Of a stretch of DNA of 64,000 nt, positions 2,372-48,376 are shown one piece after another (position 1 is the first letter of the stretch; each line of letters opens with the position of its first letter). Made by a program: the position numbers and the translations under genes. The stretch lies in the IMG/VR virus record IMGVR_UViG_3300009703_004110, positions 1-64,000 of that record; one strand, written 5' to 3'. The notes beneath the pieces were generated by a model. That model was not told where the DNA came from. It did not search any database and worked only from the letters and a program-made list of their open reading frames with translations.

Positions 2372-2465
2372 TTTACGTCCAGAAAGAGGGTATTAAAGGC
2401 TCATTACGACCCTGTTTTTCTTTTTGAGCGAAATGAGGCTCTTATTTGGGGCTATTATCCGCCCT

Positions 2466-26044: not shown

Positions 26045-26712
26045 CCGGTCCCGCCCTTCCACATTGCCGCCTCTGCGGCTCTCCTTTTTTGGTGACCAGG
26101 AGAAGAAACAAATGCCACTGGTATTAGATTTCCAGCACCAGTTAAATCGCCTGAATTAATTAACTTCAGAAGTTTTGACCTGGAGATTGTTCCAACTCCA
26201 GTGTTGTATATTATACTAACTAATGCATTAACTTGATTGGTATTTAATGGCGTTGTCACATTTCTCTTAATAAAGCCGAGAACTTTATCCATGTCTTTAG
26301 TCAGATACTGATCGGCCTGTGATTTGGTAATTCTCATTGGACTAGTTTGCCCAACTTTACCGTGCCTATGACCATATCCAATTGCCCACCAACCACCATC
26401 ATCATATGATTCCAATCGAAGGCCTTCAAATTTCTTAATCATATTAGCGCCCTCCTGATCATAAGCGGCTTCCGCATTAGGATCTGGAACTTCTATTATT
26501 TGGCCGATCTGTAATTTAGTCCAATCAAGATCAGGGTTTGCATTCTCAATCATTCTTTGATAAACTGGATTACCACCAGAGATACTCCAGGCCGTATCTC
26601 CCGATTTGATTGTATATGTTTTTGCTGTTTTCAAAAAAGAAAAGAGAAGACGGGCCTCTTTATGAAGCCCCTCTTCTCTTAAATATTGGTATAAACCTTC
26701 TAGCTTTTTCAT
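26041..26712 (-). CDS. Leader + LysM + GH24 lysozyme
   Basis: YTIKSGDT...LQIGQIIEVP (LysM); IKKFEG...YDD...IGYGH and RRAAE (GH24). Confidence 0.92.
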   Translation of the reverse strand: MKKLEGLYQYLREEGLHKEARLLFSFLKTAKTYTIKSGDTAWSISGGNPVYQRMIENANPDLDWTKLQIGQIIEVPDPNAEAAYDQEGANMIKKFEGLRLESYDDGGWWAIGYGHRHGKVGQTSPMRITKSQADQYLTKDMDKVLGFIKRNVTTPLNTNQVNALVSIIYNTGVGTISRSKLLKLINSGDLTGAGNLIPVAFVSSPGHQKRRAAEAAMWKGGTG

Positions 26713-29510: not shown

Positions 29511-32500
29511 TTAAAACTCTATAGTGCATGTGGCCCCATCACAAAACTTGTCCTCTTTCTCGTGGACGCTAAAGCTTAAATCAATATCTTTTAGATTGCT
29601 AGATAGTTTCAAGTATTCTTCTCTAGAAATAGTCTCGTAAGGTGCCAATTTATATCCGTGGTCATTCAATGGTAGGAAACTTATGGACTTTAGTCTGGTC
29701 TCATACATAGAAAGTGCTGTAGAAATTTGCTTAGCCTCAGTCTCGTTGAATGTAATTGTGGCAGAAACTTGATTATCAGCCCAGTATCTTTGCATCTGAG
29801 CTACTAACTCTAATTGCTCCCACATACTAGCATCATACTTAGACTTAACAAAATTCTCTATGTAAATAGGAAAGTCAACGACCATAGAGTCTGGTTGATA
29901 AGGGCATGGGTTTACCTGATGTCCTGCCTCAATACATGCCGGAATAATAGGAGAGTCTTTCTGAATTCTAATTCTTCTAATATAGTATTCGCTATGATCA
30001 AAATGAACACCAGGAGAAACACCTGGCAAGAGAGAGACTGTACCACTCGGCTTAACAGATGTCATTTTAATAGAGCGAGGTACGCAAAGCCAGTCGCTAT
30101 ATTTCTTGTCCAATCCTCTAATTCTATCGTATCCACTATCACACCATTCCATATGAGCACGGTACCCAACTTTTGCAATATTATTTTGGATACCAGACTG
30201 AGAGCAACCAATTCTTCTATTACGCATCATTACCGCATTAGTACGTGGGTCGTGCGTTGGAAGTAGTGTGACCGTTTTGGCATATAAATATGCGTACTTA
30301 AGGGTCGCCAGATAATCCTCAAGGCTTTCGTGATTAACAGGGAAGGTCTCGACTAGACAGCATAACTCAAAGCTCTCTAGCGTTTGCTCAGAACAGTTGT
30401 GAACAATAATTCCATTTGCCCCAAATCTATGTACTTCATCAATAGTACAATCATATACCTTTTCAATACCAATATAAGTAACCGACTCTACTTCTGCAAC
30501 AAATCTTTCTCTATTTAGAGTTCGTCTATAATCATTCATTCTAAGTCGTAATTTATCATTTCTTTCCATTTCATCAAAATTAATCTGTAATAAAAAGTGT
30601 GATAAATTATCATTACTAATTACTAATTCATGCATAGCATTACATTCATATAGTTTATATCCACTTTTTCCATCTGGTAGCAACCGCTTTCCAGCTTCGC
30701 GCCTATTTCTATAAACTGTTGAATTAACTCCAAAATTAAGTAACATTTTTTGAATAATTAATAAATGCTGCTCGTTTGCTAATCCTATTCTAACCGAAAG
30801 TCCCTTGGTTTGAGTGCCCTGAACTGAGCCATCTGCATCAAAAAAGCCACGTAAAAACCCTGCTTGAAATTTAGATGATGTACATAATAAGGTGCTTTCA
30901 TTTATTATATTTTTTTCATGATCAATTCCATAATCTATTGCTTTTTCCCAAAGTTGCCGACTTTTAATTGAGACCATATCTTTTGAATCTATATTACACC
31001 CATTTCTATTAGAGTGATACCTAGGATCTCCCCCCAAGGTCTTTGTTCTTTCTATAGCAAGATTAAGCATATCATTTTTTGTAGATCCCCAATATTGCAA
31101 AATTCCTGATTTTTGCTCTTTATGAAAATATCCATCTCCTAGCAAGCCACCCAATAACCATCCTTCATTAAATGAGCCATCGCCTTCCCAGCTAATAAGA
31201 TTATTTTCATTATATCTTGTGTCATTTAATATCAACTTATCACCAGCATCTAAATCACCAGCTTCTACCCATAATTCATATCGCTTTTTTCTTGTAATTT
31301 TTGGAGCAGTTAATATCTTGTGATCTTCGGTTACTTTAATAGAATGTCCTTCTTTTGTTTTAACCAAATATACTGGCTTTGTTCCTGTTTCAAAAACACC
31401 GGTTTTACAGTTATATTTTTTTCCATTGACTATAGCTATAAATGGTTTATCAAGCATTTCATCTGCTCTAACAGGTCCTTCTTCTGTAAAAATTAAGGTA
31501 TCTCCGGTAATACATGGGTTGGCACCCTCTGCTCTCCTATCTTTCCAGTTAGGTGGCTCCATCATACGACCGTAAGCTCTAGCGTTATGAAGCCACATAA
31601 ATCCAGGCTCGCCATTTACTTTGATCATATCAGCAAACTTAGAATAATCTATCCCAATTTCTGCAAAAATAGAATTATTAGAGGCCCAACGACGATCTTC
31701 TAAGGCTTCTTTGTTAAGTTTTAAAGATCTAAACTCTTTATCTTCGGGAGATCCGAACATAATTTCGGCAATTCTGCGCACATTACCTGCAACAACACAT
31801 TTGCCGACATAATTAAAGATGTCCACAATTTGTGTTGAATTAATCTCATAAGGTGTGAACTCTTGTATCTCAATAGAAAAAGATAAAGGCTCTGGGCGTT
31901 CTGTTTCTGACATAACTGTAGTAGGTGTAATTTTAGTATCGTTTGGTACCAAAACAGAGATTATATTCTCATGCAAATTTCTTAATGGGCCGGCACCAGA
32001 CGCAGTTCCACCGAATCCTCTAATTGGGGCTCCGTATGGTCTAATTTTAGAATAATTAAAAACTGGAATAGAGCCTCTTCCGACAAAGGCATCCAATAGA
32101 ACTCTAACAGATTCTACCCAGCCTTCTCTTGTGTCAGGGATTACCCATTCCGCCTGTGCCATTTTCGGTGTTTTAATAGTAACAAGGCCGGCACCTTTTA
32201 CATCTCCACCGACACCAACTCCAAGCATTGACATATCCATAAGAAACGTAAATGGTGAGGCAAAGTCTGATGAAATATCCTTAGTACTTGTGAAAGCGCA
32301 ATTATTTAAAGCAGCACTTCCCATTTTCCATATTTGAGGAACCCCCATCATCCAAAGTCCGCGTCCTGGTGGAAGAAATTTAAACTCCCACATTCTAGTA
32401 AACATTTCTTGAGCACTTCTTTGTGATTTATGAGCATTCCAAGGCAGCCTTAGTCTTTCACAGTGTGACCTCTGAATATTATAAACACCTTCAACAACTC

Positions 32501-32675
32501 TTTGGCAAGTTTGCCAAAATTCTTCGGTTCTCCCGGACTCTTCATCAATTACTCTAGCGTAAGTTCGCTTATAAGTAACATATCCGAGCGGGCCCCACTT
32601 CGGTTGCTGGTCTATAAAGTTCGACATGAACTTGGTAGACAGCTTAAACGGGTTCGCTGGAAAAGACAGCATCAT
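29511..32675 (-). CDS. nrdJ: Class II (AdoCbl-dependent, monomeric RTPR-type) ribonucleotide reductase, intein-containing
   Basis: PPGRGLW, ALNNC, GNVRR, GANP|C.E, VKPSGT, C-terminal CDGATC. Confidence 0.93.
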   Translation of the reverse strand: MMLSFPANPFKLSTKFMSNFIDQQPKWGPLGYVTYKRTYARVIDEESGRTEEFWQTCQRVVEGVYNIQRSHCERLRLPWNAHKSQRSAQEMFTRMWEFKFLPPGRGLWMMGVPQIWKMGSAALNNCAFTSTKDISSDFASPFTFLMDMSMLGVGVGGDVKGAGLVTIKTPKMAQAEWVIPDTREGWVESVRVLLDAFVGRGSIPVFNYSKIRPYGAPIRGFGGTASGAGPLRNLHENIISVLVPNDTKITPTTVMSETERPEPLSFSIEIQEFTPYEINSTQIVDIFNYVGKCVVAGNVRRIAEIMFGSPEDKEFRSLKLNKEALEDRRWASNNSIFAEIGIDYSKFADMIKVNGEPGFMWLHNARAYGRMMEPPNWKDRRAEGANPCITGDTLIFTEEGPVRADEMLDKPFIAIVNGKKYNCKTGVFETGTKPVYLVKTKEGHSIKVTEDHKILTAPKITRKKRYELWVEAGDLDAGDKLILNDTRYNENNLISWEGDGSFNEGWLLGGLLGDGYFHKEQKSGILQYWGSTKNDMLNLAIERTKTLGGDPRYHSNRNGCNIDSKDMVSIKSRQLWEKAIDYGIDHEKNIINESTLLCTSSKFQAGFLRGFFDADGSVQGTQTKGLSVRIGLANEQHLLIIQKMLLNFGVNSTVYRNRREAGKRLLPDGKSGYKLYECNAMHELVISNDNLSHFLLQINFDEMERNDKLRLRMNDYRRTLNRERFVAEVESVTYIGIEKVYDCTIDEVHRFGANGIIVHNCSEQTLESFELCCLVETFPVNHESLEDYLATLKYAYLYAKTVTLLPTHDPRTNAVMMRNRRIGCSQSGIQNNIAKVGYRAHMEWCDSGYDRIRGLDKKYSDWLCVPRSIKMTSVKPSGTVSLLPGVSPGVHFDHSEYYIRRIRIQKDSPIIPACIEAGHQVNPCPYQPDSMVVDFPIYIENFVKSKYDASMWEQLELVAQMQRYWADNQVSATITFNETEAKQISTALSMYETRLKSISFLPLNDHGYKLAPYETISREEYLKLSSNLKDIDLSFSVHEKEDKFCDGATCTIEF
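30396..31514 (-). mobile_element. Intein with LAGLIDADG endonuclease, directly before the RNR catalytic Cys
   Basis: NP|CITGDT...GFFDADG...IIVHN|CSEQ; 373 aa. Confidence 0.93.
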
Positions 32676-33198
32676 TAGCCTCCATATAATCTTTTACTTT
32701 TTGTATTGATCTCTTTTTTAGAATACGCACACGCTCGACAGACACGTTCAGCTCTTGGCTTATTGAGGTTAGAGTGTGCTCTTCGAGTAAAGACATGTAT
32801 AATATTTTTTGTTCTCTATTCGAAAGCATTTTGCAACTTAAAACCTCTTTTACCAGCACAACATTTTCCTGCCATTTTACATTCAAACCGCTAAGATTAA
32901 TAGACTTCAGTGGTCTGTATTTTTTCTGAAAGTCTCTACTTGCATTAGCAAAATGCCAGTTGGACCATCGGTAAAAGTCAAAATGTCTATGGCAGTCAAA
33001 AGTTTTAATGGAGGTCCAGAGGGCCAAGTTAAATTCCTGCTCCAAATCCTCCACATGAGAAAAACTTCTAAATTTTTTTATTCTACTAATAACAAGTGGA
33101 CGCAGTTTCAAAAACAGATCTGCCTGCCATTTACTAGAAGTACCGTTAGCGTTGTCTGAGAATATGCTATGAACCTCATGATTACTCAAGAGAGACAT
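32644..33198 (-). CDS. Sigma70-family sigma factor (regions 2 and 4)
   Basis: EDLEQE..LALW.SIKTFD (region 2); LSNREQKIL...TLTSISQELNVSVERVR (region 4); start at MSLLSN. Confidence 0.85.
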   Translation of the reverse strand: MSLLSNHEVHSIFSDNANGTSSKWQADLFLKLRPLVISRIKKFRSFSHVEDLEQEFNLALWTSIKTFDCHRHFDFYRWSNWHFANASRDFQKKYRPLKSINLSGLNVKWQENVVLVKEVLSCKMLSNREQKILYMSLLEEHTLTSISQELNVSVERVRILKKRSIQKVKDYMEANDAVFSSEPV

Positions 33199-33199
33199 T

Positions 33200-33751
33200 T
33201 TATTCCTTATCTTCGCCTTGTCTGTATTGCTCAGTGAACGCGCCATCCTTCCACATTCGGACAGTTAGTGTTTCTTCTGACAATGTAAATGTCGCAACCA
33301 CATCATCCCGTACAGAGAATGAGGCCGCAGATATATGTCTCGTGCCGCTTCCTTCCGGTATTTCTAAGGATGGCTCTTCAACGGTTAGATATATTCCAGT
33401 GCCAAGAATTTGGCCATTATGATTAATTACAATGGCACCGTCATCTCCGCTTTCAAAAATCTTATCCACCTCTTGATCAAATTGTCCAAAAGCAACATTC
33501 ATATACTTTTGAATTAGATTCTTGCCAAGCTGGCGCATACCAGGTACGGCGTGATCATGATATCTATCAAAGGCTCCTAGGACCACTAAAACCCCGATGC
33601 GCTTTCCTTTCTTTTGCAAATTATCAGCTAGAGAGCACATCAAGGAATATATTTTCTTTTCCGATCGCTCTCTTGCCATGTTAAATTGATATGAGTAATC
33701 TACGTGTGGTTCTTTACGAACTGTTACATTTGTTTCAGCAGATTCAGCCAT
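33200..33751 (-). CDS. Stand-alone diadenylate cyclase (DAC/DisA_N) domain protein
   Basis: DGA motif (DDGAIVI), GTRHISAA, LSEET. Confidence 0.85.
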   Translation of the reverse strand: MAESAETNVTVRKEPHVDYSYQFNMARERSEKKIYSLMCSLADNLQKKGKRIGVLVVLGAFDRYHDHAVPGMRQLGKNLIQKYMNVAFGQFDQEVDKIFESGDDGAIVINHNGQILGTGIYLTVEEPSLEIPEGSGTRHISAASFSVRDDVVATFTLSEETLTVRMWKDGAFTEQYRQGEDKE

Positions 33752-33762
33752 GATATCTCCAA

Positions 33763-35205
33763 TTACTTTTTAAAGGTTACGTTATACTTTTCGTCCTCTT
33801 CATCATCTTGTATGCTGAGACCAAGCTCATCATAAGTATAATGAATTGTCTCACCTTCATTATCGACAGTTTCTAGGTTTATAATCCCTGGCCAGATATC
33901 ATGTATATACTCTAATACATTTTCAACGTGCTTAGGATCTAACGTACCAATTTGTCCACTCTTGTGCTCTAGCTCGATGCCCATAGCGGAGGCCTTACTT
34001 ATTGCGATAATGGGGGCACGGTAGTTGTAAATACCCCTTGCTATATATTCTACCACGTCCTCTACATCCGTACTTTTAATTTGTATGATTTTCTCTTTTG
34101 CTCGGTTGTAACCCTGCTTATAGACGAACATCTTAAGCTTGTCGACAATGGCCTGTGTCAGATAATTTCTCAAGAAGGAAATATCGTCTTCATCTTCTAC
34201 TATCTGAAGTATTTTTTGCAGCCCCGTTACGTCTGAGCTGCCTGCTTTATACATTCTATCCCATCGCTCTCTAACGTCATTTAAGATGGTGAAGCCCAAA
34301 AAGTATGGATTTATATTAAGCTTATTGCTACCTGGTTGAACAACACGTTCATGAATCTTGACAAACTCAAGATACTCGTGTGGAGATAATTCATCATCAG
34401 AAAGCAGATACATTAATTCTGCATGAATGAAGCTGGCAAAACCTTCATTCACAATCTTAGTGCAGTACTGAGGATAGAAGTAAAAGGACTCTTCTCTGAT
34501 GATCTCAAATATATCTCTTTCCCATGGTTCTAAATTGGCATAATTGGCGAAGAACCAAAGAAGGTCCTCTTCTGGTCGCGGAGGAAACTGGTCATTCTCA
34601 ACCACCTGCTTAAAAGAAGGCTCCTTGTCAAGCCCGAACATATCGTCAAACTCGTTCTCTTTTCTTTTTTTCCAGACTTTCTTTCGACCCTCATATGGCT
34701 TTCTATGTATATCTCTCTTCCAGTTAATATTTTTGTCCATAGCAAATGCTGTGTCCATAATTCTTTCAACTGTATCAAGACCATACTTTGTAATATATTC
34801 CTCTACTCTGGCTGCTCGCTCTGCTGCATGATAGACCATCTTGCGATCTGTTTTCTTAAACAAATAGTTGTTCTTAAAGAAGTGCACGTGCCCTATGACG
34901 TGAGCAATAACCATTGTATTTGCGATGTTACTGTTAGATTCGAGCAAGAATGCATAGGAAGGGTCATTGTTGAGCACAAGCTCATAAACCTTAGACATGC
35001 CCATCTCACCCTGAGTCTTCTGATACTCATAACTTTGACCATAAGACCAGTGACGAGCCCTAGTGGGAAGACCATAGCTCATAATTTCTAGCATTACTTC
35101 TTCCGGTACAACTTCCCACATAATCGGGAAGAAATCTAACCCAAGATCCTTCTCGGCCGTTTCTTCGAACATTTTGGTTCGTCTGGCTAAAACTTCATTC
35201 ATCAT
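33763..35205 (-). CDS. spoVR: SpoVR/YcgB family protein
   Basis: HWSYG, YELVLNNDP, AHVIGHVHFFKNN, TKIVNEG, NPYFLG. Confidence 0.93.
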   Translation of the reverse strand: MMNEVLARRTKMFEETAEKDLGLDFFPIMWEVVPEEVMLEIMSYGLPTRARHWSYGQSYEYQKTQGEMGMSKVYELVLNNDPSYAFLLESNSNIANTMVIAHVIGHVHFFKNNYLFKKTDRKMVYHAAERAARVEEYITKYGLDTVERIMDTAFAMDKNINWKRDIHRKPYEGRKKVWKKRKENEFDDMFGLDKEPSFKQVVENDQFPPRPEEDLLWFFANYANLEPWERDIFEIIREESFYFYPQYCTKIVNEGFASFIHAELMYLLSDDELSPHEYLEFVKIHERVVQPGSNKLNINPYFLGFTILNDVRERWDRMYKAGSSDVTGLQKILQIVEDEDDISFLRNYLTQAIVDKLKMFVYKQGYNRAKEKIIQIKSTDVEDVVEYIARGIYNYRAPIIAISKASAMGIELEHKSGQIGTLDPKHVENVLEYIHDIWPGIINLETVDNEGETIHYTYDELGLSIQDDEEDEKYNVTFKK

Positions 35206-35704
35206 CTAGCTCCTCATCAAATAGGTCAAGGAAGTCCTTGGTTGACATATTTCTTGTCTCATCTAAAAATGTATCAAAATCTGCACCGCCACGTATCTTG
35301 GTACCACTATATATAATCCTATCTAAAGATTTTGGTACTGGTACGCCATTAGAGTTGGGACTTAATGACGTGTATTGCATCTTCTTATTAAAGACATCCA
35401 TGTGGTAGATCAATTCATTACGAATATAATCTGGGCACTCATCAAAAACCTCTTCAAATGGTATAGTGACATATCTTATCGACGCTCTTGCACTATTTCT
35501 CAAAGCTTTTCTGCCAACAGCGGTAGATTTATCTACCTTATGAGGCCCAGGCGCCCTTCCAACGACCTTTTTCTTCCATATAGCTCCATCTCTTCTGATG
35601 GTTACAATGAAACCTGTATGCTTTAAGGTGAATTCTCCTCTTTCCAGAGAGATTGGAGTTAATAGCCCTGTTTTAAAAGCCTTTTTAACTGCCTCAGACA
35701 TCAT
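35195..35704 (-). CDS. Hypothetical protein with FEEV..LxYHMD motif
   Basis: IPFEEVFDECPDYIRNELIYHMDVF; lies between yeaH-like and spoVR. Confidence 0.7.
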   Translation of the reverse strand: MMSEAVKKAFKTGLLTPISLERGEFTLKHTGFIVTIRRDGAIWKKKVVGRAPGPHKVDKSTAVGRKALRNSARASIRYVTIPFEEVFDECPDYIRNELIYHMDVFNKKMQYTSLSPNSNGVPVPKSLDRIIYSGTKIRGGADFDTFLDETRNMSTKDFLDLFDEELDDE

Positions 35705-36915
35705 GACTTTACTTTTCTTCTTCGCTTCCTAACAACTCGTTTCTTTTTATTAGAAACATCATCTATATTGAAGAACTTTTTAAGAGCGTCAAAAACATCA
35801 TCACGTTCTTGAAGTCTAAGTGTAACATACCTAGTTCTGGTGATGCCTTTATCTAAGATATCTGATAGTCTATCATGATTATTAAACCATGCACTTTCTC
35901 GTTCTACATTTGGAATTATCTCTCCGTATCCTATTGCCCTACACATAGGAAGAAGTCTTTTGACATATTCTAGGCAAATATTATTATCATTTCCCCAGTT
36001 ATCACCATCACTGAACTCAATTAAATAGTTATTCCATCTATCTGGCGGATGATGTGATGACATATGTTCATAAGCAAGCTTAAAGGCTGAGCTGCACTGA
36101 GTTCCCCCCGAAGAGTTAATGGAGAAGAACCTTTGCTCGGTTTCAATCCAGGCCTTAGAATCATGGGCTATAAAGACTATATCTATTTTTTTGTATCGTC
36201 TTCTTAAGAATTGAACCATCCAAAAGAAAAAGCTTTTTGCGATGTGCGTCTTCTCTTCACCCATAGATCCTGAACGATCCATTAGAAGATAAACAGCGGC
36301 ATTAGAATGGTATTCTTTAGTAACGTCCCACTCTCTGTACCTAAAGTCATCTTGGTGAAACTCACCTACTTTGGCATCGCCTTTAGCGGCGTTTCTAATC
36401 AGGTTCTGTATTAGAGTTCTTTTGATATCAAGATTTGGCATAATGCCTTTTTTCTCAATAGAGGAAAACTCTTCTAATTCTGACTCAATCTGGGTCGCAC
36501 CTTTTGGCTCCATCCACGGTAAATCTAATTCTTCCAGGAGAATATCGACCACTTCGTTGATTGACACTTCTGCATCGTAATACTTTTCCCCATCTTCATT
36601 ACCGGCGCCTTGGCCCTTACCTTGTTGACTCGGACCTTTGCCTATCTTATATTTATCGCCCTTTTTGCCATCAAGACCTTGTCCAACCTCCTGGTTGTCT
36701 TTAATTCTGCCATATTTAAACCTATATCTGTCAAGATACTTTACCGGTACTTTAATTTTCTTATCGCCATCGGATCGTATGACATCATATTCTGTGATCA
36801 GGTCTTTACCATTTTTACGAATAGCGCGCTTAACCAGCTCTTTATGTCGAGCTGAGTCTCGCTTACCTCGTCTTTTCAACTTCCATATATCAGAAAGGCT
36901 ATCATACTTTGGCAT
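35701..36915 (-). CDS. yeaH: YeaH/YhbH (DUF444) vWA-domain protein
   Basis: D..RH, LELP-like LDLP, MDRSGSM (MIDAS), SGGTQCSSA, SDGDNW. Confidence 0.92.
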   Translation of the reverse strand: MPKYDSLSDIWKLKRRGKRDSARHKELVKRAIRKNGKDLITEYDVIRSDGDKKIKVPVKYLDRYRFKYGRIKDNQEVGQGLDGKKGDKYKIGKGPSQQGKGQGAGNEDGEKYYDAEVSINEVVDILLEELDLPWMEPKGATQIESELEEFSSIEKKGIMPNLDIKRTLIQNLIRNAAKGDAKVGEFHQDDFRYREWDVTKEYHSNAAVYLLMDRSGSMGEEKTHIAKSFFFWMVQFLRRRYKKIDIVFIAHDSKAWIETEQRFFSINSSGGTQCSSAFKLAYEHMSSHHPPDRWNNYLIEFSDGDNWGNDNNICLEYVKRLLPMCRAIGYGEIIPNVERESAWFNNHDRLSDILDKGITRTRYVTLRLQERDDVFDALKKFFNIDDVSNKKKRVVRKRRRKVKS

Positions 36916-36917
36916 TA

Positions 36918-38822
36918 TTAGTTCCGTGCCATTAGAGAGCTAACGTAACGTAGAAGCTGGTTGGCGCTTGCCGCTGTGTATCCATGCTTTTCGCATAAGA
37001 CTTCTACTACTCCATTAACTCTTTTTAGCTCATTAGCATCAGGGTTTCTAGAACTTACGGTCAATCTAATTACATCCTGTCTCTCATCAAAAAGCTGCTT
37101 CTCTAAAGCCTCACGGAGATGTGGGTGATCTTGGTAGCGATATTCGCCATGATTTTTGAGGGAGCGAAGCATTTTTCTATAGATCTCTTGGCGGAAAGAG
37201 GTTTTGCCATTTTCAGATATCTGAATCTTCTCCTCAACGGAGCGCATTAGTCTCTCATCTGGCTCAGCAGGATTGCCCCACTCATCTTCTAGCTCAGTTC
37301 CATCTAGGAAAGCCTCCACTTGCTCTAGGTAATTCTTCAGAAGATTGCCGATTTCCTGTTCGAAGTTAACAAAGAAAGCCTTCTGAACGTCGTTACGGGC
37401 CATCTTGTTGTACTCTTCAATAATTAGAACCAATAAGGCCTCCAGCCTTTCAGTTTCAGCTCTGTCAATCTTGGGATTAGATTCAAACCCGTCCCTCAAT
37501 GATCTTACGATATCGATTGGAGTAACGAAGGTCTTGCCGTTAGCCAGTTCGGATGAGATACGATTGATTACATATCTCGGTGAAATACCTGACATTCCTT
37601 CGCTAGCGAATTCGCCCTTGAACTTACCGCTCTCTGAAACAGTAAAGCCTTCTACTTCCTCACCGTTGTAAAGCCTCATTTTGTTCAGTAGGGTTAGTCC
37701 TTGATTTGAAGATGTCTTTAGGCGAGATAGAACCGCCAACATTGCGGCACACTTTAGGGTATGCGGTGCAAGATGCCTCTCTCCAAAGTTTGCCTGCGAG
37801 ATTAGCTTCTCATAAATCTTGACCTCTTCGTCAACCTGAAGATTATATGGAACTCTTACCACGATTGTTCTGTCATGAAGCGCTTCCATTTCATCTTTTG
37901 CCAAGAATCGGTTATATTCTGTCTCATTAGTGTGAGCTAAAATGAACTCGTCTGCATAAATTAATGGAAATCTTCCAGTCTTAATGTTCTTTTCTTGTGC
38001 TAAGGTTAGAAGAACATACAAGAACTTCTGATCAACCTTTAGCATCTCTACGAACTCCATCATTCCTCGGTTGGCTACATTTAACTCTCCGTCAAATCTG
38101 TAGGCTCTAGGGTCTGATTCTGCTCCATAAGTCCCAATAGTACTCAGATCTAATGAGCCAACTAATTCGGAGATATCTTGGCTCTTCTTATCTGATGGTA
38201 CAAAGGTTCCGATGCAAGCTCGGTCTAATTCTGAAATAAAGACTCTGCGCACTGGCATAGAGAGGAAGTCACCGTCATATTTCTCTTTCAGGTGCAATGC
38301 CATGAGCGGGCTCAATTGGCCTTGTATATTTACGCCGTATCGGTCTTTGAAAGTTTGTCGTAACTCGACTGGGATGGCCGTTAACGGATCTTCGTACATT
38401 GGTGAATCTTCTAAGGCGTAAAGTGCGCCGGCGTCTGTTTTGGAGTAGGCCTCCAATCCTCTTTTTAGCAAAATAGCCAACTGTGATTTACCCGATGATG
38501 TTGGTCCGTAAAGTAGTAATATTCTTCGGCCAACTTCACTCCCAGCCGCGGCAGCTCTAAGATAAGACATAATATGTTCAATTGGAACATCAATACCAAA
38601 CAAATCTTCTTCAAAGAAATTATAGCTGGTTATATTACCATCATCATCTTTTTCAACACCATGAGATTCAATCATCTCTAAAACTCTCTGGTGTGCGTTT
38701 TTATGAAGGCCTGGATTTTCAGTAATTAACTGAACATAATCCTTTAAAGTTCCTTCCCATGCTGTTACGTCGTTATGTTCGACGTGACTTTGCAATAATT
38801 CAAATAGTTCAGTCTCAGCCAT
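36918..38822 (-). CDS. prkA: PrkA/YeaG AAA+ serine kinase family protein
   Basis: LLYGPTSSGKS, SDPRAYRFDGELNVANRGMMEFVEMLK, GISPRYV; start at MAETE. Confidence 0.95.
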   Translation of the reverse strand: MAETELFELLQSHVEHNDVTAWEGTLKDYVQLITENPGLHKNAHQRVLEMIESHGVEKDDDGNITSYNFFEEDLFGIDVPIEHIMSYLRAAAAGSEVGRRILLLYGPTSSGKSQLAILLKRGLEAYSKTDAGALYALEDSPMYEDPLTAIPVELRQTFKDRYGVNIQGQLSPLMALHLKEKYDGDFLSMPVRRVFISELDRACIGTFVPSDKKSQDISELVGSLDLSTIGTYGAESDPRAYRFDGELNVANRGMMEFVEMLKVDQKFLYVLLTLAQEKNIKTGRFPLIYADEFILAHTNETEYNRFLAKDEMEALHDRTIVVRVPYNLQVDEEVKIYEKLISQANFGERHLAPHTLKCAAMLAVLSRLKTSSNQGLTLLNKMRLYNGEEVEGFTVSESGKFKGEFASEGMSGISPRYVINRISSELANGKTFVTPIDIVRSLRDGFESNPKIDRAETERLEALLVLIIEEYNKMARNDVQKAFFVNFEQEIGNLLKNYLEQVEAFLDGTELEDEWGNPAEPDERLMRSVEEKIQISENGKTSFRQEIYRKMLRSLKNHGEYRYQDHPHLREALEKQLFDERQDVIRLTVSSRNPDANELKRVNGVVEVLCEKHGYTAASANQLLRYVSSLMARN

Positions 38823-38823
38823 T

Positions 38824-39120
38824 CTATCTCCGATATTTGTATGGATTTGGCGTATCGCCATATATAGAGTCTATAGTGTTTTGGTTGCCAGCCTTTATTT
38901 TGTCTACAGTTTTTCTAACGCCTTCTTTGATTTCGTCGATTATCTCGGAAGAATCTTTGTCGACTTTATTGGAAATACTGCCTAGCTTATGAAATAGTAC
39001 CCCGTTCTCGCACTGCGAACACTCTTTTTTTTCTTTCTTCTTTTTCACGAACTCAGATATGGTCATGTTCTGAGTGCCTATAAAATCACATTCTGAGCAT
39101 CCAAAAGTATATTTAGGCAT
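38824..39120 (-). CDS. FmdB-like zinc ribbon protein
   Basis: MPKYTFGCSEC...CSQC. Confidence 0.8.
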   Translation of the reverse strand: MPKYTFGCSECDFIGTQNMTISEFVKKKKEKKECSQCENGVLFHKLGSISNKVDKDSSEIIDEIKEGVRKTVDKIKAGNQNTIDSIYGDTPNPYKYRR

Positions 39121-39301
39121 CGTCTTCTTCGTCCACAAAGATCATATCCGTACCCTCAACTTTTAGATTGCCAGATAGTGATAAATCCCTAAGTAATTGC
39201 TTTTTAAACTTTGGATCAGTAATTAAAATTGTTACCTCTAAATCCTTAGTATCAGGACGAAAAGATAAATTTTTAATTTTCCCAATAACTTTCTTCTTCA
39301 T
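39113..39301 (-). CDS. Hypothetical protein
   Basis: 62-aa ORF overlapping both neighbours. Confidence 0.65.
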   Translation of the reverse strand: MKKKVIGKIKNLSFRPDTKDLEVTILITDPKFKKQLLRDLSLSGNLKVEGTDMIFVDEEDDA

Positions 39302-39575
39302 TAAAAGCCTTCTCCAATGCTGCGATTATATCTTTGTGTTTTAGTCCAACTAAATACATTAAGTTATCGACTTCGTTCTTTGTTATCCTATTATACCCAA
39401 TTATTTTTGTTCTTGGTATGGAAATTCTTCCGATCAATTCAGTAATAAGCTCGGGTTGATCAAATTTAAACAGAGGCAATACCTCAACGTGACTTTTCTT
39501 ATTGGACAAAACGATTGCGATGAACTTAGTATCTTCAAGTTCGATGCTGACAAATTCGTGTTTATCAAACGTCAT
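39273..39575 (-). CDS. Hypothetical protein
   Basis: Start probably MTFDKH, overlapping the DnaB stop. Confidence 0.6.
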   Translation of the reverse strand: MTFDKHEFVSIELEDTKFIAIVLSNKKSHVEVLPLFKFDQPELITELIGRISIPRTKIIGYNRITKNEVDNLMYLVGLKHKDIIAALEKAFNEEESYWEN

Positions 39576-40923
39576 TTTCATCACCAATTTCTTCTGCCCA
39601 GTCATCAGGCACACTCAAAATTCTGGATTTTGTAAAGTCTTTAAGCAAAGAGAGCTTGCCCTTTTTGCCGTCCCTATTTTTAACAACATGGACCGCCATA
39701 TCCTCCCTAAGGTGCTCTTCATCTCGTTTTTCGATTAGCAAAACAATGTTGGCATTATCACCAATCATCTTAGAACGAGCCAAATCCTCCAGATCGTTGC
39801 CAGGGTCTTTTGCGTTCTTATTTCTTGCCTTCCTCTGTGATGCAGTAATTACTGGAACATCTTTTGCTCTCGCAAACTCAGCCATATTTTCAGCAATATA
39901 CCCTAGATCCAGCCAGTCAGAATTATTTATGCTGTTTGGCTTCATAATTCCAAGATAGTCTATGCACACTAGGTCTGGCTTGAATTCTGCTATAATAGTA
40001 TCATACCTGGCCTCTATATCTGTCATCTTTGAGCCACGAGGCATGTCACAGATGTATAGGGTCTTATCGTATTTACTCTGAAAGGTAAGCGTGCTTCTCC
40101 ATCTTTCTTTCTCTTGAGCAGTAAGCATTCCTCTAACAAGATGCTTATGTTCCATTCCAGATATGCAAGCGTCTATTCTCTGCTCGGTCTGTGCTTTGGA
40201 CATCTCTAAAGTGAAGTAAAGAATATTGGCGCCATCCTTTTTGACTGGGGCGCCATGCAGAGGGTTGTTAGTTCCCAGCCAAGCATTTATTCCTATATTT
40301 AGCATCAGCATTGACTTACCAGATGACGATGGTCCTGCAATAATCATTAGCTCTTGCTTTTTGATACCCCAAATATATTCGTCAACTTCGCGATAGCCTG
40401 TCAAGACACCAGAGACTTCTCCCGGATTTGCCTCAACATACTTATAAGCTTCCAGCCTATCTTTTGCGGAATCTGCGAAGTTTCCTTCTGCAAATACTGC
40501 GCTTCTTTTCATTCTTTCAATTTTGGCACCGATTCTCAAAACTTCAGTTTCAAAATCTTCAGCGTCAAATTCGTCTTCATCGACTGAAACAGATTCTGCC
40601 AAAGCTCTAGCTAAGAACGCTTGGTATCTTTTTTTGATTTCATCGACGTGAAATCCGACCTCTGCCTCTACACACGTAGATTCTCTAATGACTCCTATAA
40701 GTTCAATGTGATCAATATCATCTAATAAACTTTCTTCCATTAATTCGAAAGTAGGAGGAGACCTGTATCTTTTAAAATAATCTCTTACGGTCCTAGCAAT
40801 GGGCTTATAATTTGGCAACATTGCTTCGATCAATAAATTAGTATCGATCATTCTTGAGACTTGATTGAACTCAATCGGACCCTTCATCATATAATTGATG
40901 ACCTTTCTTTCTCTCAAGGACAT
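39565..40923 (-). CDS. dnaB: Replicative DnaB-like helicase
   Basis: GPSSSGKS, FTLEM, CIDYLGIM, TASQ, KNRDG. Confidence 0.93.
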   Translation of the reverse strand: MSLRERKVINYMMKGPIEFNQVSRMIDTNLLIEAMLPNYKPIARTVRDYFKRYRSPPTFELMEESLLDDIDHIELIGVIRESTCVEAEVGFHVDEIKKRYQAFLARALAESVSVDEDEFDAEDFETEVLRIGAKIERMKRSAVFAEGNFADSAKDRLEAYKYVEANPGEVSGVLTGYREVDEYIWGIKKQELMIIAGPSSSGKSMLMLNIGINAWLGTNNPLHGAPVKKDGANILYFTLEMSKAQTEQRIDACISGMEHKHLVRGMLTAQEKERWRSTLTFQSKYDKTLYICDMPRGSKMTDIEARYDTIIAEFKPDLVCIDYLGIMKPNSINNSDWLDLGYIAENMAEFARAKDVPVITASQRKARNKNAKDPGNDLEDLARSKMIGDNANIVLLIEKRDEEHLREDMAVHVVKNRDGKKGKLSLLKDFTKSRILSVPDDWAEEIGDENDV

Positions 40924-42401
40924 TTACTTTCTCCAGTTACATATGTGTACGGTTTATTTTTTATCCATAATCTCTGCCCGGCATCATAAATTTTTACCAG
41001 TCCCAACTCCTTAGCGTGCTCCTTTTGAGATATTTTTCTAATATCCATGTTTGCTCTACAGTGTAGCCTATTATATGTTTTATTTAAATCTGTCCACTTC
41101 CATCCTAATATATCATGAGAATGAATAAATCCAATTTGTTTCAAGAAGTTTCCAGTTCCGTATCTTAAATCAACCCAATAGTGTATTTCATTTATAGATT
41201 CCAAAGAACCCTCTAAATGTTTCAATAATTTAGAAAAACCGCCCATAACAATGTGATTATTTTTTGAGACCGTTCTTTCTATTTTTAAAATATTATTTGA
41301 GACTTTATAAGAAATCATCATAATTAACTTATCATTAATTTTAAGACCAATATGCCTCGCCTTAATCCTACCCATTAAATGATTTTCTGTTAGAAATTGA
41401 TCTGCATCTTTTTGATTTATAGTGCAAATATTAGTTTTTCTTCCGTGTATTTTTTTTGACTTAAATAACTGGTTGTTTATCATTGATTCTAAAATATCAA
41501 GTTTGTAATTTACTTCATCTTCTCTAAACTGTAATATTTTAAGACCAAGATCTTCATATGCTTTTCTCATATGAAAATGATAATATTTGTCATCTTTTAC
41601 TAACTCTGAATGCCAATATAGCCCATCAACATTTATTGCGAGTTTATTATTTAATTTAAAATCAGGTTTGTATCTAAGATTTGGATACCTCTCTAAATCA
41701 AAATATTTATTATGCAACTCTATAGATAACTTGTTTTTTAAAATATTTTCAATATTTGTAATACCTGGCTCATAAGTCTTTAAAAAATTAACAAACTCTT
41801 CTTTTGTATGATTCTTATGTGAATATATCCATCTATATACTATAATGTTTGTAATATTATATTCTTGCGCCCATTCATATGCAGTTTTTCCATACAATAT
41901 TGTATTTTTTCTGTCCTCTCTTTCTTTATAGGCCTTGCTTCTGAAATAACTTTTATGTCCATATTTATTTAATATAGTCTTATTTTTTTTATCTATAACT
42001 TCTTTTGTAGAATTAAAGTGCACTCCGCCATATTTTAAATTAGATATTTCAGCAATTCTCGATATTCTTGCTTCTTTTTCATCAGCTTGACTTCTTACAA
42101 TATTCCATTTCGATAATTTTTCGAATATCAAAGATCTATTTACGCCATATTCTTCCGCTATTTTAATAGGTAATTTCTTTAAAACTACGTATTCTTTATA
42201 AAGCTGCTTTTTTGTAATTTTAGATTTAGACGAACGCTTTTTATACTTAGTCAGCATAAACCTATCTTTATATCTAGACAATGTTGTTTTGCTATATCCA
42301 AACTCATCAGATATTTGCTTTATAGTTTTATTTTTTATTATATACTGTTCAAATAACCAATCTTTATTTTTGTATTTTTCTAAAGTCTTTTCCTGCGACA
42401 T
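40914..42401 (-). CDS. Free-standing homing endonuclease (HTH repeats + PD-(D/E)XK/Vsr-like nuclease + C-terminal domain)
   Basis: KPDF..LAINVDGLYWHSE, QFREDE, VDLRYGTG, IYDAGQ; wedged between the loader and helicase genes. Confidence 0.8.
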   Translation of the reverse strand: MSQEKTLEKYKNKDWLFEQYIIKNKTIKQISDEFGYSKTTLSRYKDRFMLTKYKKRSSKSKITKKQLYKEYVVLKKLPIKIAEEYGVNRSLIFEKLSKWNIVRSQADEKEARISRIAEISNLKYGGVHFNSTKEVIDKKNKTILNKYGHKSYFRSKAYKEREDRKNTILYGKTAYEWAQEYNITNIIVYRWIYSHKNHTKEEFVNFLKTYEPGITNIENILKNKLSIELHNKYFDLERYPNLRYKPDFKLNNKLAINVDGLYWHSELVKDDKYYHFHMRKAYEDLGLKILQFREDEVNYKLDILESMINNQLFKSKKIHGRKTNICTINQKDADQFLTENHLMGRIKARHIGLKINDKLIMMISYKVSNNILKIERTVSKNNHIVMGGFSKLLKHLEGSLESINEIHYWVDLRYGTGNFLKQIGFIHSHDILGWKWTDLNKTYNRLHCRANMDIRKISQKEHAKELGLVKIYDAGQRLWIKNKPYTYVTGESKCP

Positions 42402-48316: not shown

Positions 48317-48376
48317 GCGTTCTCCATACCTAGATTTTACTCTAGGCACGAAGAAATGCTTGAATTTATATGTAAA

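What the first reader, a model, noticed from the sequence alone, without database searches (positions are those of the whole stretch)
32644..39120. Phage operon coupling PrkA-YeaH-SpoVR to a diadenylate cyclase and a sigma factor
Seen: contiguous, tightly spaced minus-strand genes in the order Zn-ribbon, prkA, yeaH, orphan, spoVR, DAC, sigma70, then nrdJ, placed directly after dnaB. Established: PrkA/YeaG, YhbH/YeaH and SpoVR/YcgB form a conserved triad tied to sporulation in Bacillus and to nitrogen-starvation or stationary-phase survival in E. coli, and DAC domains make c-di-AMP. Inference: the phage carries a complete starvation or dormancy control module wired to a second-messenger enzyme and its own sigma factor, potentially overriding host development. 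I do not know this triad-DAC-sigma linkage as a described system.
Basis: partly seen in the sequence, partly recalled or inferred. Interest (0 to 1): 0.75.

Follow-up and report, generated by a model that had tools for sequence, protein, structure and literature searches.

The report
Phage starvation-protease triad plus c-di-AMP cyclase
A widespread family of very large ocean and subsurface phages carries its own copy of a bacterial starvation-response trio (PrkA, YeaH, SpoVR), always followed by a small enzyme predicted to make the signal molecule c-di-AMP; this suggests the phages recycle and re-tune starved host cells, but no experiment has tested it.

Summary
On the minus strand, tightly packed, lie a 62-aa gene, a Zn-ribbon gene, prkA, yeaH/yhbH, a 169-aa orphan, spoVR, a 183-aa DAC-domain gene and a short sigma-70 gene. 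They sit between dnaB and an intein-bearing nrdJ.

The replicon is a huge phage. It has portal, terminase, DNA polymerase and 19 tRNAs, and its relatives are 316-422 kb. The "provirus" flag looks like a trimming artefact.

In 16 of 16 distinct related lineages the DAC gene directly follows the triad. It is absent within 10 kb of about 75 bacterial triads and from independently acquired phage triads (Thermus phages, RsoM2USA). So the linkage is conserved but arose once, inside a collinear replication module.

The sigma gene is present in only 9 of 16 lineages, needs at least 5 changes on the tree, and is missing from a complete relative. The orphan occupies a variable insertion slot.

The DAC keeps the DGA, GTRH and SEE motifs, but RHR is RHI.

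Recent work ties YeaG/PrkA to ATP-dependent, starvation-induced bulk proteolysis. My best reading is therefore a phage-run host-proteome recycling module with a c-di-AMP adjunct, not a sporulation override. I found no prior description of a phage DAC. Function remains untested.

The parts
39113..39301 (-). 62-aa conserved small protein (o62), first gene of the conserved block
   Evidence: Homologue at the same place in all relatives, 44-69% identity, with a conserved KFKKK-LRDLSLSG motif. No Pfam or PHROG family.
38824..39120 (-). Zn-ribbon protein (CxxC...CxxC, FmdB-like), about 98 aa counted from the ATG at 39120
   Evidence: TIGR02605 weak hit, E 4e-3. The MPKY-start, both CxxC pairs and a C-terminal YG motif are conserved in relatives. 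Always directly upstream of prkA.
36918..38861 (-). PrkA/YeaG-family AAA+ protein; likely start is the ATG at 38822
   Evidence: AAA_PrkA 7e-115 and PrkA_C 1e-65. Walker A GPTSSGKS at residues 119-126. E 4e-133 to solved structure 9xip. phrog_22605. GGAG lies upstream of 38822.
35701..36915 (-). YeaH/YhbH (DUF444, vWA-type) protein
   Evidence: PF04285 3e-85; TIGR02877 7e-111, below its cut-off. MIDAS DxSxS at residue 213. phrog_19072.
35195..35704 (-). 169-aa orphan in a variable slot between yeaH and spoVR
   Evidence: No family. Its N-terminal 111 residues are found only in the nearest relative (L005/L070). Other relatives have nothing, a 107-aa ORF or HNH endonucleases in this slot.
33763..35205 (-). 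SpoVR/YcgB-family protein
   Evidence: PF04293 2e-105. AF2 model pLDDT 85.8. Invariant H102-x3-H106 and N253-E-G..H261 across phage and bacterial members. Zincin-like fold matches, Z up to 12.7.
33200..33751 (-). Stand-alone diadenylate-cyclase (DAC) domain protein, 183 aa
   Evidence: PF02457 1.5e-12. Profile hits CdaA structures and aligns DGA, GTRH and SEE. AF2 model: the top 50 PDB matches are all CdaA, DacM or DisA. RHR is RHI, invariant in the clade. It is the only DAC in the genome.
32644..33246 (-). Short sigma-70 family protein (regions 2 and 4); likely start is the ATG at 33198
   Evidence: Sigma70_r4 1e-10, Sigma70_r2 1e-6, TIGR02937 6.5e-15. Orthologues at 21-54% identity occupy the same place in 9 of 16 lineages.
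39565..40923 (-). DnaB-type replicative helicase (upstream flank)
   Evidence: DnaB_C 2.5e-36. Syntenic in all relatives.
29511..32675 (-). B12-dependent ribonucleotide reductase (RTPR/NrdJ type) interrupted by an intein with a LAGLIDADG endonuclease (downstream flank)
   Evidence: RNR_Alpha 3e-30, Intein_splicing, LAGLIDADG_3, TIGR02505 8e-96.
26747..29125 (-). PIN-PhoH protein interrupted by an intein/LAGLIDADG element (end of the collinear module)
   Evidence: PhoH 1.7e-43, PIN_4 2e-19, LAGLIDADG_3 1e-11. Syntenic in relatives.

Best explanation
SHOWN. This is a conserved, co-directional gene block (o62, Zn ribbon, PrkA, YeaH, SpoVR, DAC) in the DNA-replication and nucleotide-salvage region of a roughly 390-420 kb phage. 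The phage belongs to a widespread marine and subsurface clade. All six genes are kept in every lineage examined. A sigma-70 gene after the DAC is probably ancestral but has often been lost.

INFERRED mechanism, triad. During infection of nutrient-starved hosts the phage makes its own PrkA-YeaH-SpoVR machine. By analogy with E. coli YeaG/SpdA (needed for starvation-induced bulk degradation of cytoplasmic proteins) and B. subtilis PrkA (an ATP-dependent protease in vitro), the machine breaks host proteins down into amino acids and energy for phage protein synthesis. This would be the protein counterpart of the nucleotide salvage encoded next door (RNR, PhoH). PrkA would be the AAA+ motor and YeaH a vWA/MIDAS adaptor. 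SpoVR may be a zincin-like metal-dependent hydrolase subunit.

INFERRED mechanism, DAC. The small soluble DAC dimerises and makes c-di-AMP from ATP. The phage encodes no recognisable receptor or phosphodiesterase, so the signal would act on host c-di-AMP receptors for potassium and osmolyte transport and for central metabolism. This would hold turgor and metabolism steady while the amino-acid pool rises and host gene expression fails.

INFERRED mechanism, sigma. Where present, the sigma factor is a phage transcription factor and is not needed by the block.
For: Gene identities, intact motifs and tight packing.

Phage nature:
- Portal (phrog_16240, 3.5e-48) and TerL (phrog_675, 1e-66).
- DNA polymerase, two GroEL, NAMPT and an elongation factor.
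- 19 tRNAs.

Conservation:
- The PrkA-centred IMG/VR scan and the DAC-centred scan both give the same order in every locus with enough DNA. The same holds for NCBI and JGI contigs of 405 and 422 kb.
- This includes a deep lineage, L176, with PrkA at 57% and DAC at 42% identity.
- The DAC family has 213 clusters at 90% identity or below, on contigs up to 422 kb.
- Inteins and homing endonucleases have invaded prkA and spoVR in relatives, and the inteins sit in invariant motifs. That pattern is typical of genes under strong constraint.

DAC:
- DAC fold.
- DGA, GTRH and SEE align to CdaA.
- The nearest relatives are small stand-alone DACs in which the third RHR residue varies (I, L, M, V, R, K). 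One RHI protein sits in an archaeal-looking chromosome.

No phage-encoded DarA-type receptor, DHH phosphodiesterase or ydaO riboswitch was found in the 332-kb record.

Function of the triad in cells:
- PMC13684143: YeaG-dependent starvation-induced proteolysis.
- bioRxiv 10.1101/072470: yeaG, yeaH and ycgB are cofit in six bacteria.

SpoVR zincin-like fold: about 45 of the top 50 VIA-align matches are zinc metallopeptidase catalytic domains, Z 6.7-12.7.
Against: - No expression or biochemical data exist. No RNA run holds the sequence.
- The triad-DAC linkage arose once. It sits in a module that is collinear from dnaB to phoH in all relatives, so conserved adjacency may simply be inherited gene order.
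- Independent phage triads (Thermus phages, RsoM2USA, about 25 distant IMG/VR loci) and about 75 bacterial triads have no DAC within 10 kb.
- A SpoVR-DAC complex prediction gave no answer. That is not evidence either way.
- RHR is RHI, and only the triple RHR-to-AAA mutant has been tested in the literature I read (PMC3328451).
- The SpoVR-zincin match is structural only. Foldseek found nothing and no Pfam peptidase matched. The glutamate of HExxH is a valine. The tool also warns that largely helical models can reach Z of about 13 by chance.
- The roles of YeaH and YcgB in proteolysis are not shown in the papers read.
- The host is unknown, so it is not known whether it uses c-di-AMP.
Confidence: 0.4

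Rival explanations
1. Inherited neighbours only. The triad and the DAC are two separate auxiliary genes that happen to lie side by side in a rigidly collinear replication module. The DAC has its own job, unconnected to PrkA, YeaH or SpoVR. Examples would be controlling host potassium and turgor to time lysis, keeping an essential host messenger at a working level after host shut-off, or interfering with nucleotide-based immunity.
For: - The whole dnaB-to-phoH region is collinear in all relatives.
- The linkage has one origin.
- No DAC lies beside any of about 100 other triads.
- The complex prediction gave no support (uninformative).
Against: - Other items in the same region are fluid: the sigma gene was lost at least 5 times, RNR class is swapped, the orphan slot varies, and HNH elements and inteins have inserted. 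Yet the DAC is never lost or moved in 16 lineages.
- spoVR and the DAC are 11 nt apart here.
Confidence: 0.3
2. This is a dormancy or sporulation control module, wired to c-di-AMP and to the phage's own sigma factor, that overrides host development.
For: - prkA, yhbH and spoVR are sporulation-associated in Bacillus. The best YeaH model is TIGR02877 spore_yhbH.
- Phage sigma factors that alter sporulation are known (bioRxiv 10.1101/2021.11.12.468384, found).
- A sporulation-specific DAC, CdaS, exists in Bacillus (PMC4568413, title and abstract only).
Against: - The sigma gene is dispensable: 9 of 16 lineages, and absent from a complete 395-kb relative.
- It is a generic short r2+r4 sigma, far below every sporulation-sigma cut-off.
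- The triad is common in non-sporulating bacteria (10.1101/072470).
- The clade is marine or subsurface, with nearest cellular PrkA in Chloroflexota at 47-50% identity.
- No other sporulation genes were noticed.
Confidence: 0.12
3. The DAC-like protein is not a cyclase. Because RHR has become RHI it may only bind nucleotides. It could then act as a sensor or sponge, or as a regulatory subunit of the triad.
For: - The R-to-I change is invariant in the clade.
- The RHR motif is reported as essential, but only as a triple mutant (PMC3328451).
Against: - DGA, G-T-R-H and S-E-E are invariant.
- The third position varies among the nearest cellular stand-alone DACs, including RHI forms on chromosomal contigs.
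- The fold is a full DAC domain.
Confidence: 0.1
4. The region is chromosomal or host-derived and not phage. It would be a provirus flank or a mis-assembly.
For: - IMG/VR labels the record 'provirus'.
- Window 1-2500, and at least 10 kb beyond it on an ENA contig, are 55-62% GC against 38% elsewhere.
Against: - The block lies 30 kb inside uniform 38% GC phage DNA.
- Portal, TerL, DNA polymerase and tRNAs are on the same contig.
- Relatives are free-standing 316-422 kb viral contigs with the same block.
- The JGI source contig continues past the trimmed end with phage-like GC.
Confidence: 0.03

Closest known systems
Bacterial yeaG/prkA - yeaH/yhbH - ycgB/spoVR operon (YeaG recently renamed SpdA)
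   Same: Same three families in the same order, with intact Walker A and MIDAS motifs and the invariant SpoVR residues. The nearest cellular versions are in Chloroflexota: PrkA 47-50%, YeaH about 40%, SpoVR about 36% identity.
   Different: It is encoded by a lytic-type huge phage inside its replication module. It is preceded by a conserved Zn-ribbon gene and a 62-aa gene, and followed by a DAC. None of these three is found beside about 75 bacterial triads. Regulation by RpoS, NtrC or sigma-E cannot apply.
Triads already annotated in phages: Thermus phages phiYS40, TMA, Lalka and MN1; Ralstonia jumbo phage RsoM2USA; uncultured huge phages LR7565xx; PHROGs 22605, 19072 and 35217
   Same: Phage-borne PrkA, DUF444 and SpoVR genes.
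   Different: Only 28-37% identical. Gene order differs in the Thermus phages (yeaH-spoVR-x-prkA), where the genes sit next to packaging genes. None has a DAC or a sigma gene nearby. They look like independent acquisitions.
Diadenylate cyclases CdaA, DacM, DisA, CdaS and archaeal DacZ
   Same: DAC fold, with DGA, G-T-R-H and S-E-E aligned. The best NCBIfam hit is DacZ. It is small and soluble with one long N-terminal helix, so it resembles CdaS in size.
   Different: It has no transmembrane, HhH, YojJ or pyruvate-kinase-like domain. RHR is RHI. It is very divergent: only 419 of 1.84 billion representatives match at E<=1e-3. It has no PHROG family and no match among 50,697 GenBank phage records.
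Phage-encoded sigma factors, such as the sporulation-like sigmas of Bacillus phages
   Same: A short sigma-70 family protein with regions 2 and 4, hitting the PHROG sigma families 351, 1740 and 1190.
   Different: It shows no specific similarity to SigF, SigG or SigE (all far below cut-off). It is one of several sigma-like ORFs in the genome and is dispensable in the clade.
Phage host-recycling and auxiliary metabolic modules (host DNA breakdown with RNR, PhoH and nucleotide kinases)
   Same: It is placed among such genes. The inferred logic is the same: turn host macromolecules into phage building blocks.
   Different: The substrate would be the host proteome, acted on by a cellular starvation-proteolysis system. 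To my knowledge this has not been described for phages.

Membership tests
PrkA/YeaG (SpdA) family | N-terminal AAA_PrkA domain plus C-terminal PrkA domain over the full length | tested here: met
   PF08298 7e-115 (residues 38-386) and PF06798 1.4e-65 (residues 392-639). E 4e-133 over residues 33-646 to PDB 9xip.
PrkA/YeaG (SpdA) family | Walker A lysine needed for ATPase and protease activity (K108 in B. subtilis, PMC9512850) | tested here: met
   GPTSSGKS at residues 119-126. The equivalence to K108 is inferred from the motif, not from a residue-level alignment.
PrkA/YeaG (SpdA) family | ATP-dependent proteolysis, or a requirement for starvation-induced protein degradation | not testable with these tools
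   Needs biochemistry or genetics.
YeaH/YhbH (DUF444) | DUF444 domain with a vWA-type MIDAS motif (DxSxS) | tested here: met
   PF04285 3e-85. DRSGS at residue 213. The NCBIfam equivalogs score below their cut-offs (371 against 468 bits), so it is a divergent member.
SpoVR/YcgB | SpoVR domain, SpoVR_C domain and the family's invariant residues | tested here: met
   PF04293 1.8e-105. SpoVR_C is weak in this member (E 0.026) but present in all 30 aligned members. 37 columns are invariant across phage and bacterial members, including H52, E75, H102, H106, N253 and H261.
Bacterial triad operon | Contiguous order prkA-yeaH-spoVR | tested here: met
   Same order here, apart from the 169-aa insert, and in all clade members.
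Diadenylate cyclase (DAC, PF02457) | DAC domain fold | tested here: met
   Pfam 47.6 bits against a cut-off of 27. In Foldseek the top 50 matches are all DACs, probability 1.0, TM 0.5-0.66.
Diadenylate cyclase (DAC, PF02457) | DGA motif | tested here: met
   D104-G105-A106. D and G are invariant and A is nearly so. Aligned to the CdaA hDGA motif.
Diadenylate cyclase (DAC, PF02457) | RHR motif | tested here: not met
   R138-H139-I140. The third residue is Ile in all 19 aligned clade members. It varies (I, L, M, V, R, K) in the nearest representatives. Only the RHR-to-AAA triple mutant is reported (PMC3328451). I therefore file it as DAC-fold and probably a cyclase, not as a proven canonical member.
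Diadenylate cyclase (DAC, PF02457) | Synthesis of c-di-AMP from two ATP by a head-to-head dimer | not testable with these tools
   Needs an enzyme assay.
Sigma-70 family (group 4-like) | Regions 2 and 4 present | tested here: met
   PF04542 1.3e-6, PF04545 1.3e-10, and TIGR02937 55 bits against a cut-off of 42.9.
Sporulation sigma factors (SigF, SigG, SigE) | Scores above the subfamily model cut-offs | tested here: not met
   SigB/F/G 37 bits against 234, SigG 35 against 372, SigF 19 against 321. Only region 4 aligns.
Zincin/gluzincin metallopeptidases (considered for SpoVR) | HExxH plus a third metal ligand on a zincin fold | tested here: inconclusive
   VIA-align gives Z 6.7-12.7 to many zincin catalytic domains over model residues 1 to about 350. 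SpoVR has an invariant HxxxH and an NE-G motif, but Val replaces the catalytic Glu. There is no Foldseek or Pfam support.
Known anti-phage defence systems (PADLOC) | Match to a defence-system protein model | tested here: not met
   Only insignificant or generic hits were found: DolB at 3e-3 for PrkA, and a match of the sigma protein's N-terminal part (residues 11-99) to MzaA.

The most novel reading that the evidence does not exclude
The block is a self-contained, phage-borne second-messenger circuit. The phage DAC makes c-di-AMP, and that signal directly switches on or tunes a phage PrkA-YeaH-SpoVR proteolytic machine. In that machine SpoVR would be the long-sought metal-dependent peptidase subunit, and the machine would liquidate the host proteome to feed a 400-kb phage in starved cells. 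If so, it would reveal both a new phage takeover strategy and the biochemical logic of the enigmatic bacterial triad.
Probability: 0.12. Interest if true: 0.85.

Novelty: new variant of a known kind. Interest (0 to 1): 0.6.

Why it matters
The PrkA/YeaG-YeaH-SpoVR trio is one of the most widespread bacterial stress modules with no agreed mechanism. A paper from late 2026 now ties YeaG to bulk, starvation-induced proteolysis.

A large, abundant clade of marine and subsurface huge phages keeps its own intact copy. Other phage lineages acquired theirs independently. This argues that control of this pathway pays off during infection of starved cells, which is the normal state of ocean and subsurface bacteria.

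The invariably attached DAC would be, as far as I could find, the first c-di-AMP synthase reported from a phage. It would extend phage manipulation of nucleotide second messengers beyond the degradation or sponging of immune signals.

The phage versions are compact and diverse, and inteins mark the key SpoVR motifs. That makes them a good handle for working out what the three proteins do together.

Tried and rejected
- **DNA-level search of GenBank phages:** no match.
- **tblastn of the DAC against GenBank phages:** no match.
- **Pfam hallmark models on the genome** (Terminase_6N, Terminase_6C, sheath, gp23): nothing found. PHROGs later found portal and TerL.
- **PADLOC:** no defence-system match.
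- **Rfam on the whole 332-kb record:** no c-di-AMP (ydaO) riboswitch. Only tRNAs and one group I intron.
- **Search of the record for a DarA-type c-di-AMP receptor and a DHH phosphodiesterase:** none found.
- **SpoVR + DAC complex prediction:** score 0.00 and verdict 'no answer'. I do not use it as evidence.
- **Orphan 169-aa protein:** Pfam, NCBIfam, PHROGs and the ESM Atlas gave nothing usable. The Atlas model has pLDDT 0.49.
- **RNA-seq evidence:** only two DNA runs of 'subsurface metagenome' hold the sequence. Reads were laid on the GC junction instead.
- **Look-up of a gene near the record's 3' end:** failed. It was replaced by a DNA pattern scan.
- **Foldseek of the SpoVR model against PDB:** only insignificant hits, TM about 0.1. 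I ignore them.
- **AFDB clusters:** returned only SpoVR-family models.
- **First SpoVR alignment for folding:** I dropped that row and did not send it elsewhere.
- **Last paper search:** wasted, because 'YeaG' matched author names.
- **Provirus or chromosomal idea:** considered and rejected for the block itself.
- **Archaeal host idea:** considered because phage contigs were binned with DPANN MAGs and the nearest cellular mini-DACs look archaeal. Rejected because of the sigma-70 genes, DnaB, GroEL and the Shine-Dalgarno sites.

Full report
**1. What is in the sequence**

The minus strand between 39301 and 32644 carries eight co-directional ORFs. In order they are:

- a 62-aa ORF, 39113-39301
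- a Zn-ribbon ORF, 38824-39120, with a weak FmdB-type hit
- PrkA, 36918-38861 (AAA_PrkA 7e-115, PrkA_C 1e-65)
- YeaH/YhbH, 35701-36915 (DUF444 3e-85)
- a 169-aa orphan, 35195-35704
- SpoVR, 33763-35205 (2e-105)
- a 183-aa DAC-domain protein, 33200-33751 (PF02457 1.5e-12, above the cut-off)
- a 200-aa sigma-70 protein with regions 2 and 4, 32644-33246

Upstream lie a 113-aa ORF, DnaB and an HNH homing endonuclease. Downstream lie an RTPR-type NrdJ split by an intein with a LAGLIDADG endonuclease, a 114-aa ORF, and a PIN-PhoH protein that also carries an intein.

Neighbouring ORFs overlap or are at most 11 nt apart. With the conserved internal starts (prkA at 38822, sigma at 33198), stop and start are 1 nt apart and are preceded by GGAG- or AAGGA-like sites. 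This fits co-transcription and translational coupling. A consensus promoter and terminator scan was uninformative.

**2. The replicon is a huge phage**

The window is the first 64 kb of a 332,270-bp IMG/VR record. Nearly all its genes are on one strand and it is about 38% GC. Pfam hallmark models found nothing, but PHROGs found the following:

- a portal protein (3.5e-48) and a large terminase (1.2e-66) at 172-176 kb
- a large DNA polymerase
- two GroEL copies
- NAMPT
- an elongation-factor-like protein

Rfam found 19 tRNAs and a group I intron.

IMG/VR calls the record a 'provirus'. However, the JGI source contig is 391,083 bp and runs on past the trimmed end with 30-48% GC. An ENA assembly of the same phage is 420,521 bp. 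Relatives are free-standing contigs of 316, 335, 395 (100% complete), 405 and 422 kb. The trimming therefore looks like an artefact, and the true genome is about 390-420 kb. The source is a 'subsurface metagenome'. Many relatives come from marine data sets, some with Tara labels.

**3. How conserved the linkage is**

I ran three surveys:

- A PrkA-centred scan of IMG/VR gave 15 loci at 68-80% PrkA identity.
- A DAC-centred scan gave 18 loci.
- Exact-protein look-ups added NCBI and JGI contigs.

After removing duplicates there are 16 lineages in which DNA downstream of spoVR is available. All 16 have the DAC immediately after spoVR. Where upstream DNA is present, the order is dnaB, o62, Zn ribbon, prkA, yeaH, spoVR, DAC, then an RNR, the 114-aa gene and phoH. 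This holds even in a deep lineage, L176, with PrkA at 57%, DAC at 42% and DnaB at 35% identity.

An HMM built from the phage DACs found no DAC within 10 kb in any of these other triad loci:

- about 75 bacterial triads
- the Thermus phage and RsoM2USA triads
- about 25 distant IMG/VR triads

So the DAC-triad linkage is specific to this clade and strictly retained in it. But it arose once, and the whole dnaB-phoH region is collinear. Adjacency by itself therefore cannot prove functional coupling.

What argues for more than inertia is that other features of the same stretch are fluid:

- RNR class differs between relatives, with NrdJ in some and class I in others.
- The slot between yeaH and spoVR holds nothing, small orphans or HNH endonucleases.
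- Inteins come and go.

**4. The sigma factor**

Orthologues at 21-54% identity sit between the DAC and the RNR in 9 of 16 lineages, including the two deepest, L176 and L153. The ancestor therefore probably had the gene. On a PrkA tree, presence and absence need at least 5 changes among 13 scored lineages. In seven lineages the DAC is followed directly by the RNR. A 100%-complete 395-kb relative has no detectable homologue anywhere. The window's genome has further sigma-like ORFs. The protein is a generic short sigma and falls far below every sporulation-sigma cut-off. I conclude it is a dispensable neighbour and not part of the core.

**5. The DAC**

- The clade alignment has invariant D104-G105, G136-T137-R138-H139-I140 and S158-E159.
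- A profile of the clade aligns these residues to the hDGA, GTRHRAA and VSEETG motifs of solved CdaA structures.
- An AlphaFold model (pLDDT 77) has only DACs (CdaA, DacM, DisA) among its top 50 PDB matches, all at probability 1.0.
- The protein has one long N-terminal helix and no membrane, HhH or other domain.
- The canonical RHR is RHI. The literature I could read tested only RHR-to-AAA (PMC3328451).
- In a profile search of 1.84 billion representatives only 419 proteins match at E<=1e-3. The nearest are stand-alone proteins of 170-213 aa in which the third residue varies (I, L, M, V, R, K).
- One RHI protein lies on a 599-kb contig with proteasome, aCPSF1-type and MutS/L genes, so it is cellular and looks archaeal. 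Another lies beside aconitase and fumarase genes.

I therefore think the protein is probably an active cyclase, but this is inference. The record has no DarA-type receptor, DHH phosphodiesterase or ydaO riboswitch, so any c-di-AMP made would act on host targets. PHROGs has no family for this protein, and tblastn finds it in none of 50,697 GenBank phage records. Paper searches found no phage-encoded DAC.

**6. The triad**

Phage PrkA has a Walker A motif (GPTSSGKS) and YeaH has a MIDAS DxSxS motif. PrkA matches a solved PrkA-family structure, 9xip, at 4e-133.

On the PrkA tree the clade is monophyletic (support 100). It sits next to Chloroflexota, mostly Ktedonobacterales, at 47-50% identity. 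Thermus phages branch deeper, and the proteobacterial and Bacteroidota type is far away. One caveat is that the genome scan finds loci through peptide patterns taken from the query.

Triads in other phages were already annotated: phiYS40, and RsoM2USA (PMC8504454). PHROG families exist for all three proteins with 'unknown function'. So the triad in phages is not new. Its independent recurrence in several phage lineages suggests that it pays.

**7. What the triad does in cells, from papers**

- yeaG, yeaH and ycgB are each other's best cofitness partners in six bacteria (bioRxiv 10.1101/072470).
- B. subtilis PrkA is an ATP-dependent, PMSF-sensitive protease in vitro with no kinase activity. 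Its Walker A lysine is needed for sporulation (PMC9512850).
- E. coli YeaG, renamed SpdA, is required for starvation-induced, largely non-specific degradation of cytoplasmic proteins. That degradation supplies amino acids and ATP for new protein synthesis (PMC13684143).

This suggests a concrete role for the phage copy: liquidating host protein to feed phage synthesis in starved cells. It would sit beside genes that do the same for nucleotides (RNR, PhoH).

**8. A structural lead on SpoVR**

An AlphaFold model built from 30 phage and bacterial sequences has pLDDT 85.8.

- Foldseek against PDB gave nothing significant.
- AFDB clusters gave only SpoVR-family models.
- The Foldseek-independent VIA-align search returned almost only zinc metallopeptidase catalytic domains among its top 50. 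These include DUF885 proteins, M1 aminopeptidases, M3, M32, thermolysin, ACE, M49 and M61. Z ranged from 6.7 to 12.7 with 154-203 aligned residues, within model residues 1 to about 390 (mostly 1 to about 350).

Across phage and bacterial SpoVR the invariant residues include H102-x3-H106 and N253-E254-G255..H261. The spacing of the first matches HExxH, although Val replaces the catalytic Glu. From memory, the second resembles the NExxSD third-ligand motif of thermolysin.

Inteins in relatives sit exactly in these two motifs: after residue 104 (L006), after 106 (L017) and after 257 (L070, L007, L010). Inteins typically occupy active-site motifs.

The caveats are real. The tool warns that helical models can reach Z of about 13 without homology. 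No sequence method links SpoVR to peptidases. I could not inspect the coordinates. I treat this as a lead only.

**9. Verdict**

The block is real, phage-borne, conserved and apparently functional. The best-supported explanation (confidence about 0.4) is a phage-run version of the starvation proteolysis system with a c-di-AMP synthase adjunct acting on host physiology.

The main rival (about 0.3) is that the DAC is an independent auxiliary gene kept next to the triad by collinearity.

The SpoVR-DAC complex prediction returned 'no answer' and is not used.

Noticed in passing
window 1-2500 (and L052 9000-20567): There is a sharp composition jump. The first 2.5 kb of the window, and at least 10 kb beyond it on the 420-kb ENA contig, are 55-62% GC against about 38% for the phage. 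The high-GC part carries small ORFs plus ArdC-N/MPTase-PolyVal and L12-like domains. A Logan contig from the source run spans the junction. A second sample has short contigs from both sides at similar low depth. The high-GC piece therefore seems to travel with the phage and is probably not an assembly chimera. Its nature is unexplained; it may be a mobile element inside the phage.
   Followed up: partly
G000 end (332270) / L155: The IMG/VR 'provirus' trimming looks wrong. The JGI source contig Ga0114933_10000002 is 391,083 bp and continues beyond the record's end with 30-48% GC and phage-like ORFs. The true genome is probably 390-420 kb, like its relatives.
   Followed up: partly
window 29511-32675, 26747-29125, 45851-48349: There are three intein-bearing genes in one window: NrdJ, PIN-PhoH and a UvsW-like helicase, each with Hint and LAGLIDADG domains. 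Free-standing HNH homing endonucleases lie at 40914-42401 and 56386-57966.
   Followed up: partly
L006 13946-16519; L017 12222-14711; L070 7336-9990; L007, L010; L017 7973-11032: In relatives, SpoVR carries inteins at two sites, and these coincide with its two invariant motifs: inside AHVxGH, and just after NEGxA. PrkA of L017 is split near residue 310 by an in-frame insert of about 364 aa. A Ktedonobacterales SpoVR (L073) also has an insert near the second site.
   Followed up: partly
window 33763-35205 (model m224a3b96fbaf): The N-terminal ~350 residues of the SpoVR model align almost only with zinc metallopeptidase catalytic domains in a Foldseek-independent search (Z up to 12.7). This would suggest that SpoVR/YcgB is the hydrolase-like partner of the PrkA AAA+ protein. 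It is unconfirmed by sequence methods.
   Followed up: partly
window 49003-50424: A tubulin/TubZ-like protein (Tubulin 4e-15, TubZ-like_C 2e-6). It is reminiscent of the PhuZ/TubZ cytoskeletal proteins of other jumbo phages.
   Followed up: no
window 16851-19088; 6760-7503; 26041-26712: A type IA topoisomerase with C4 zinc fingers, a protein with an Fe/Mn superoxide dismutase C-terminal domain, and a LysM-lysozyme.
   Followed up: no
L067, L068 versus window, L070: The ribonucleotide reductase at the same position after the DAC or sigma gene differs in class between relatives: class I large subunit in L067 and L068, B12-dependent NrdJ here and in L070. This is an in-place swap within a collinear module.
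   Followed up: no
L072, L077: Short contigs carrying the phage-type block, or a related triad, are deposited inside MAGs labelled Candidatus Pacearchaeota and Parvarchaeota. These are most likely phage DNA binned by low GC content and not archaeal genes.
   Followed up: no
G000 187675-189345, 237196-238797, 298813-300483, 319702-321771, 244-332 kb: The phage encodes two GroEL-type chaperonins, a nicotinamide phosphoribosyltransferase, an elongation-factor-like protein, 19 tRNAs and a group I intron. This is a heavy investment in translation and cofactor supply.
   Followed up: no
PDB 9xip, 9xiq, 9xir: A solved PrkA-family structure ('Serine protein kinase', 692 aa, 30 chains over 3 entries, so probably a large oligomer) matches the phage PrkA at E 4e-133. 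I found no paper for it in the library.
   Followed up: no
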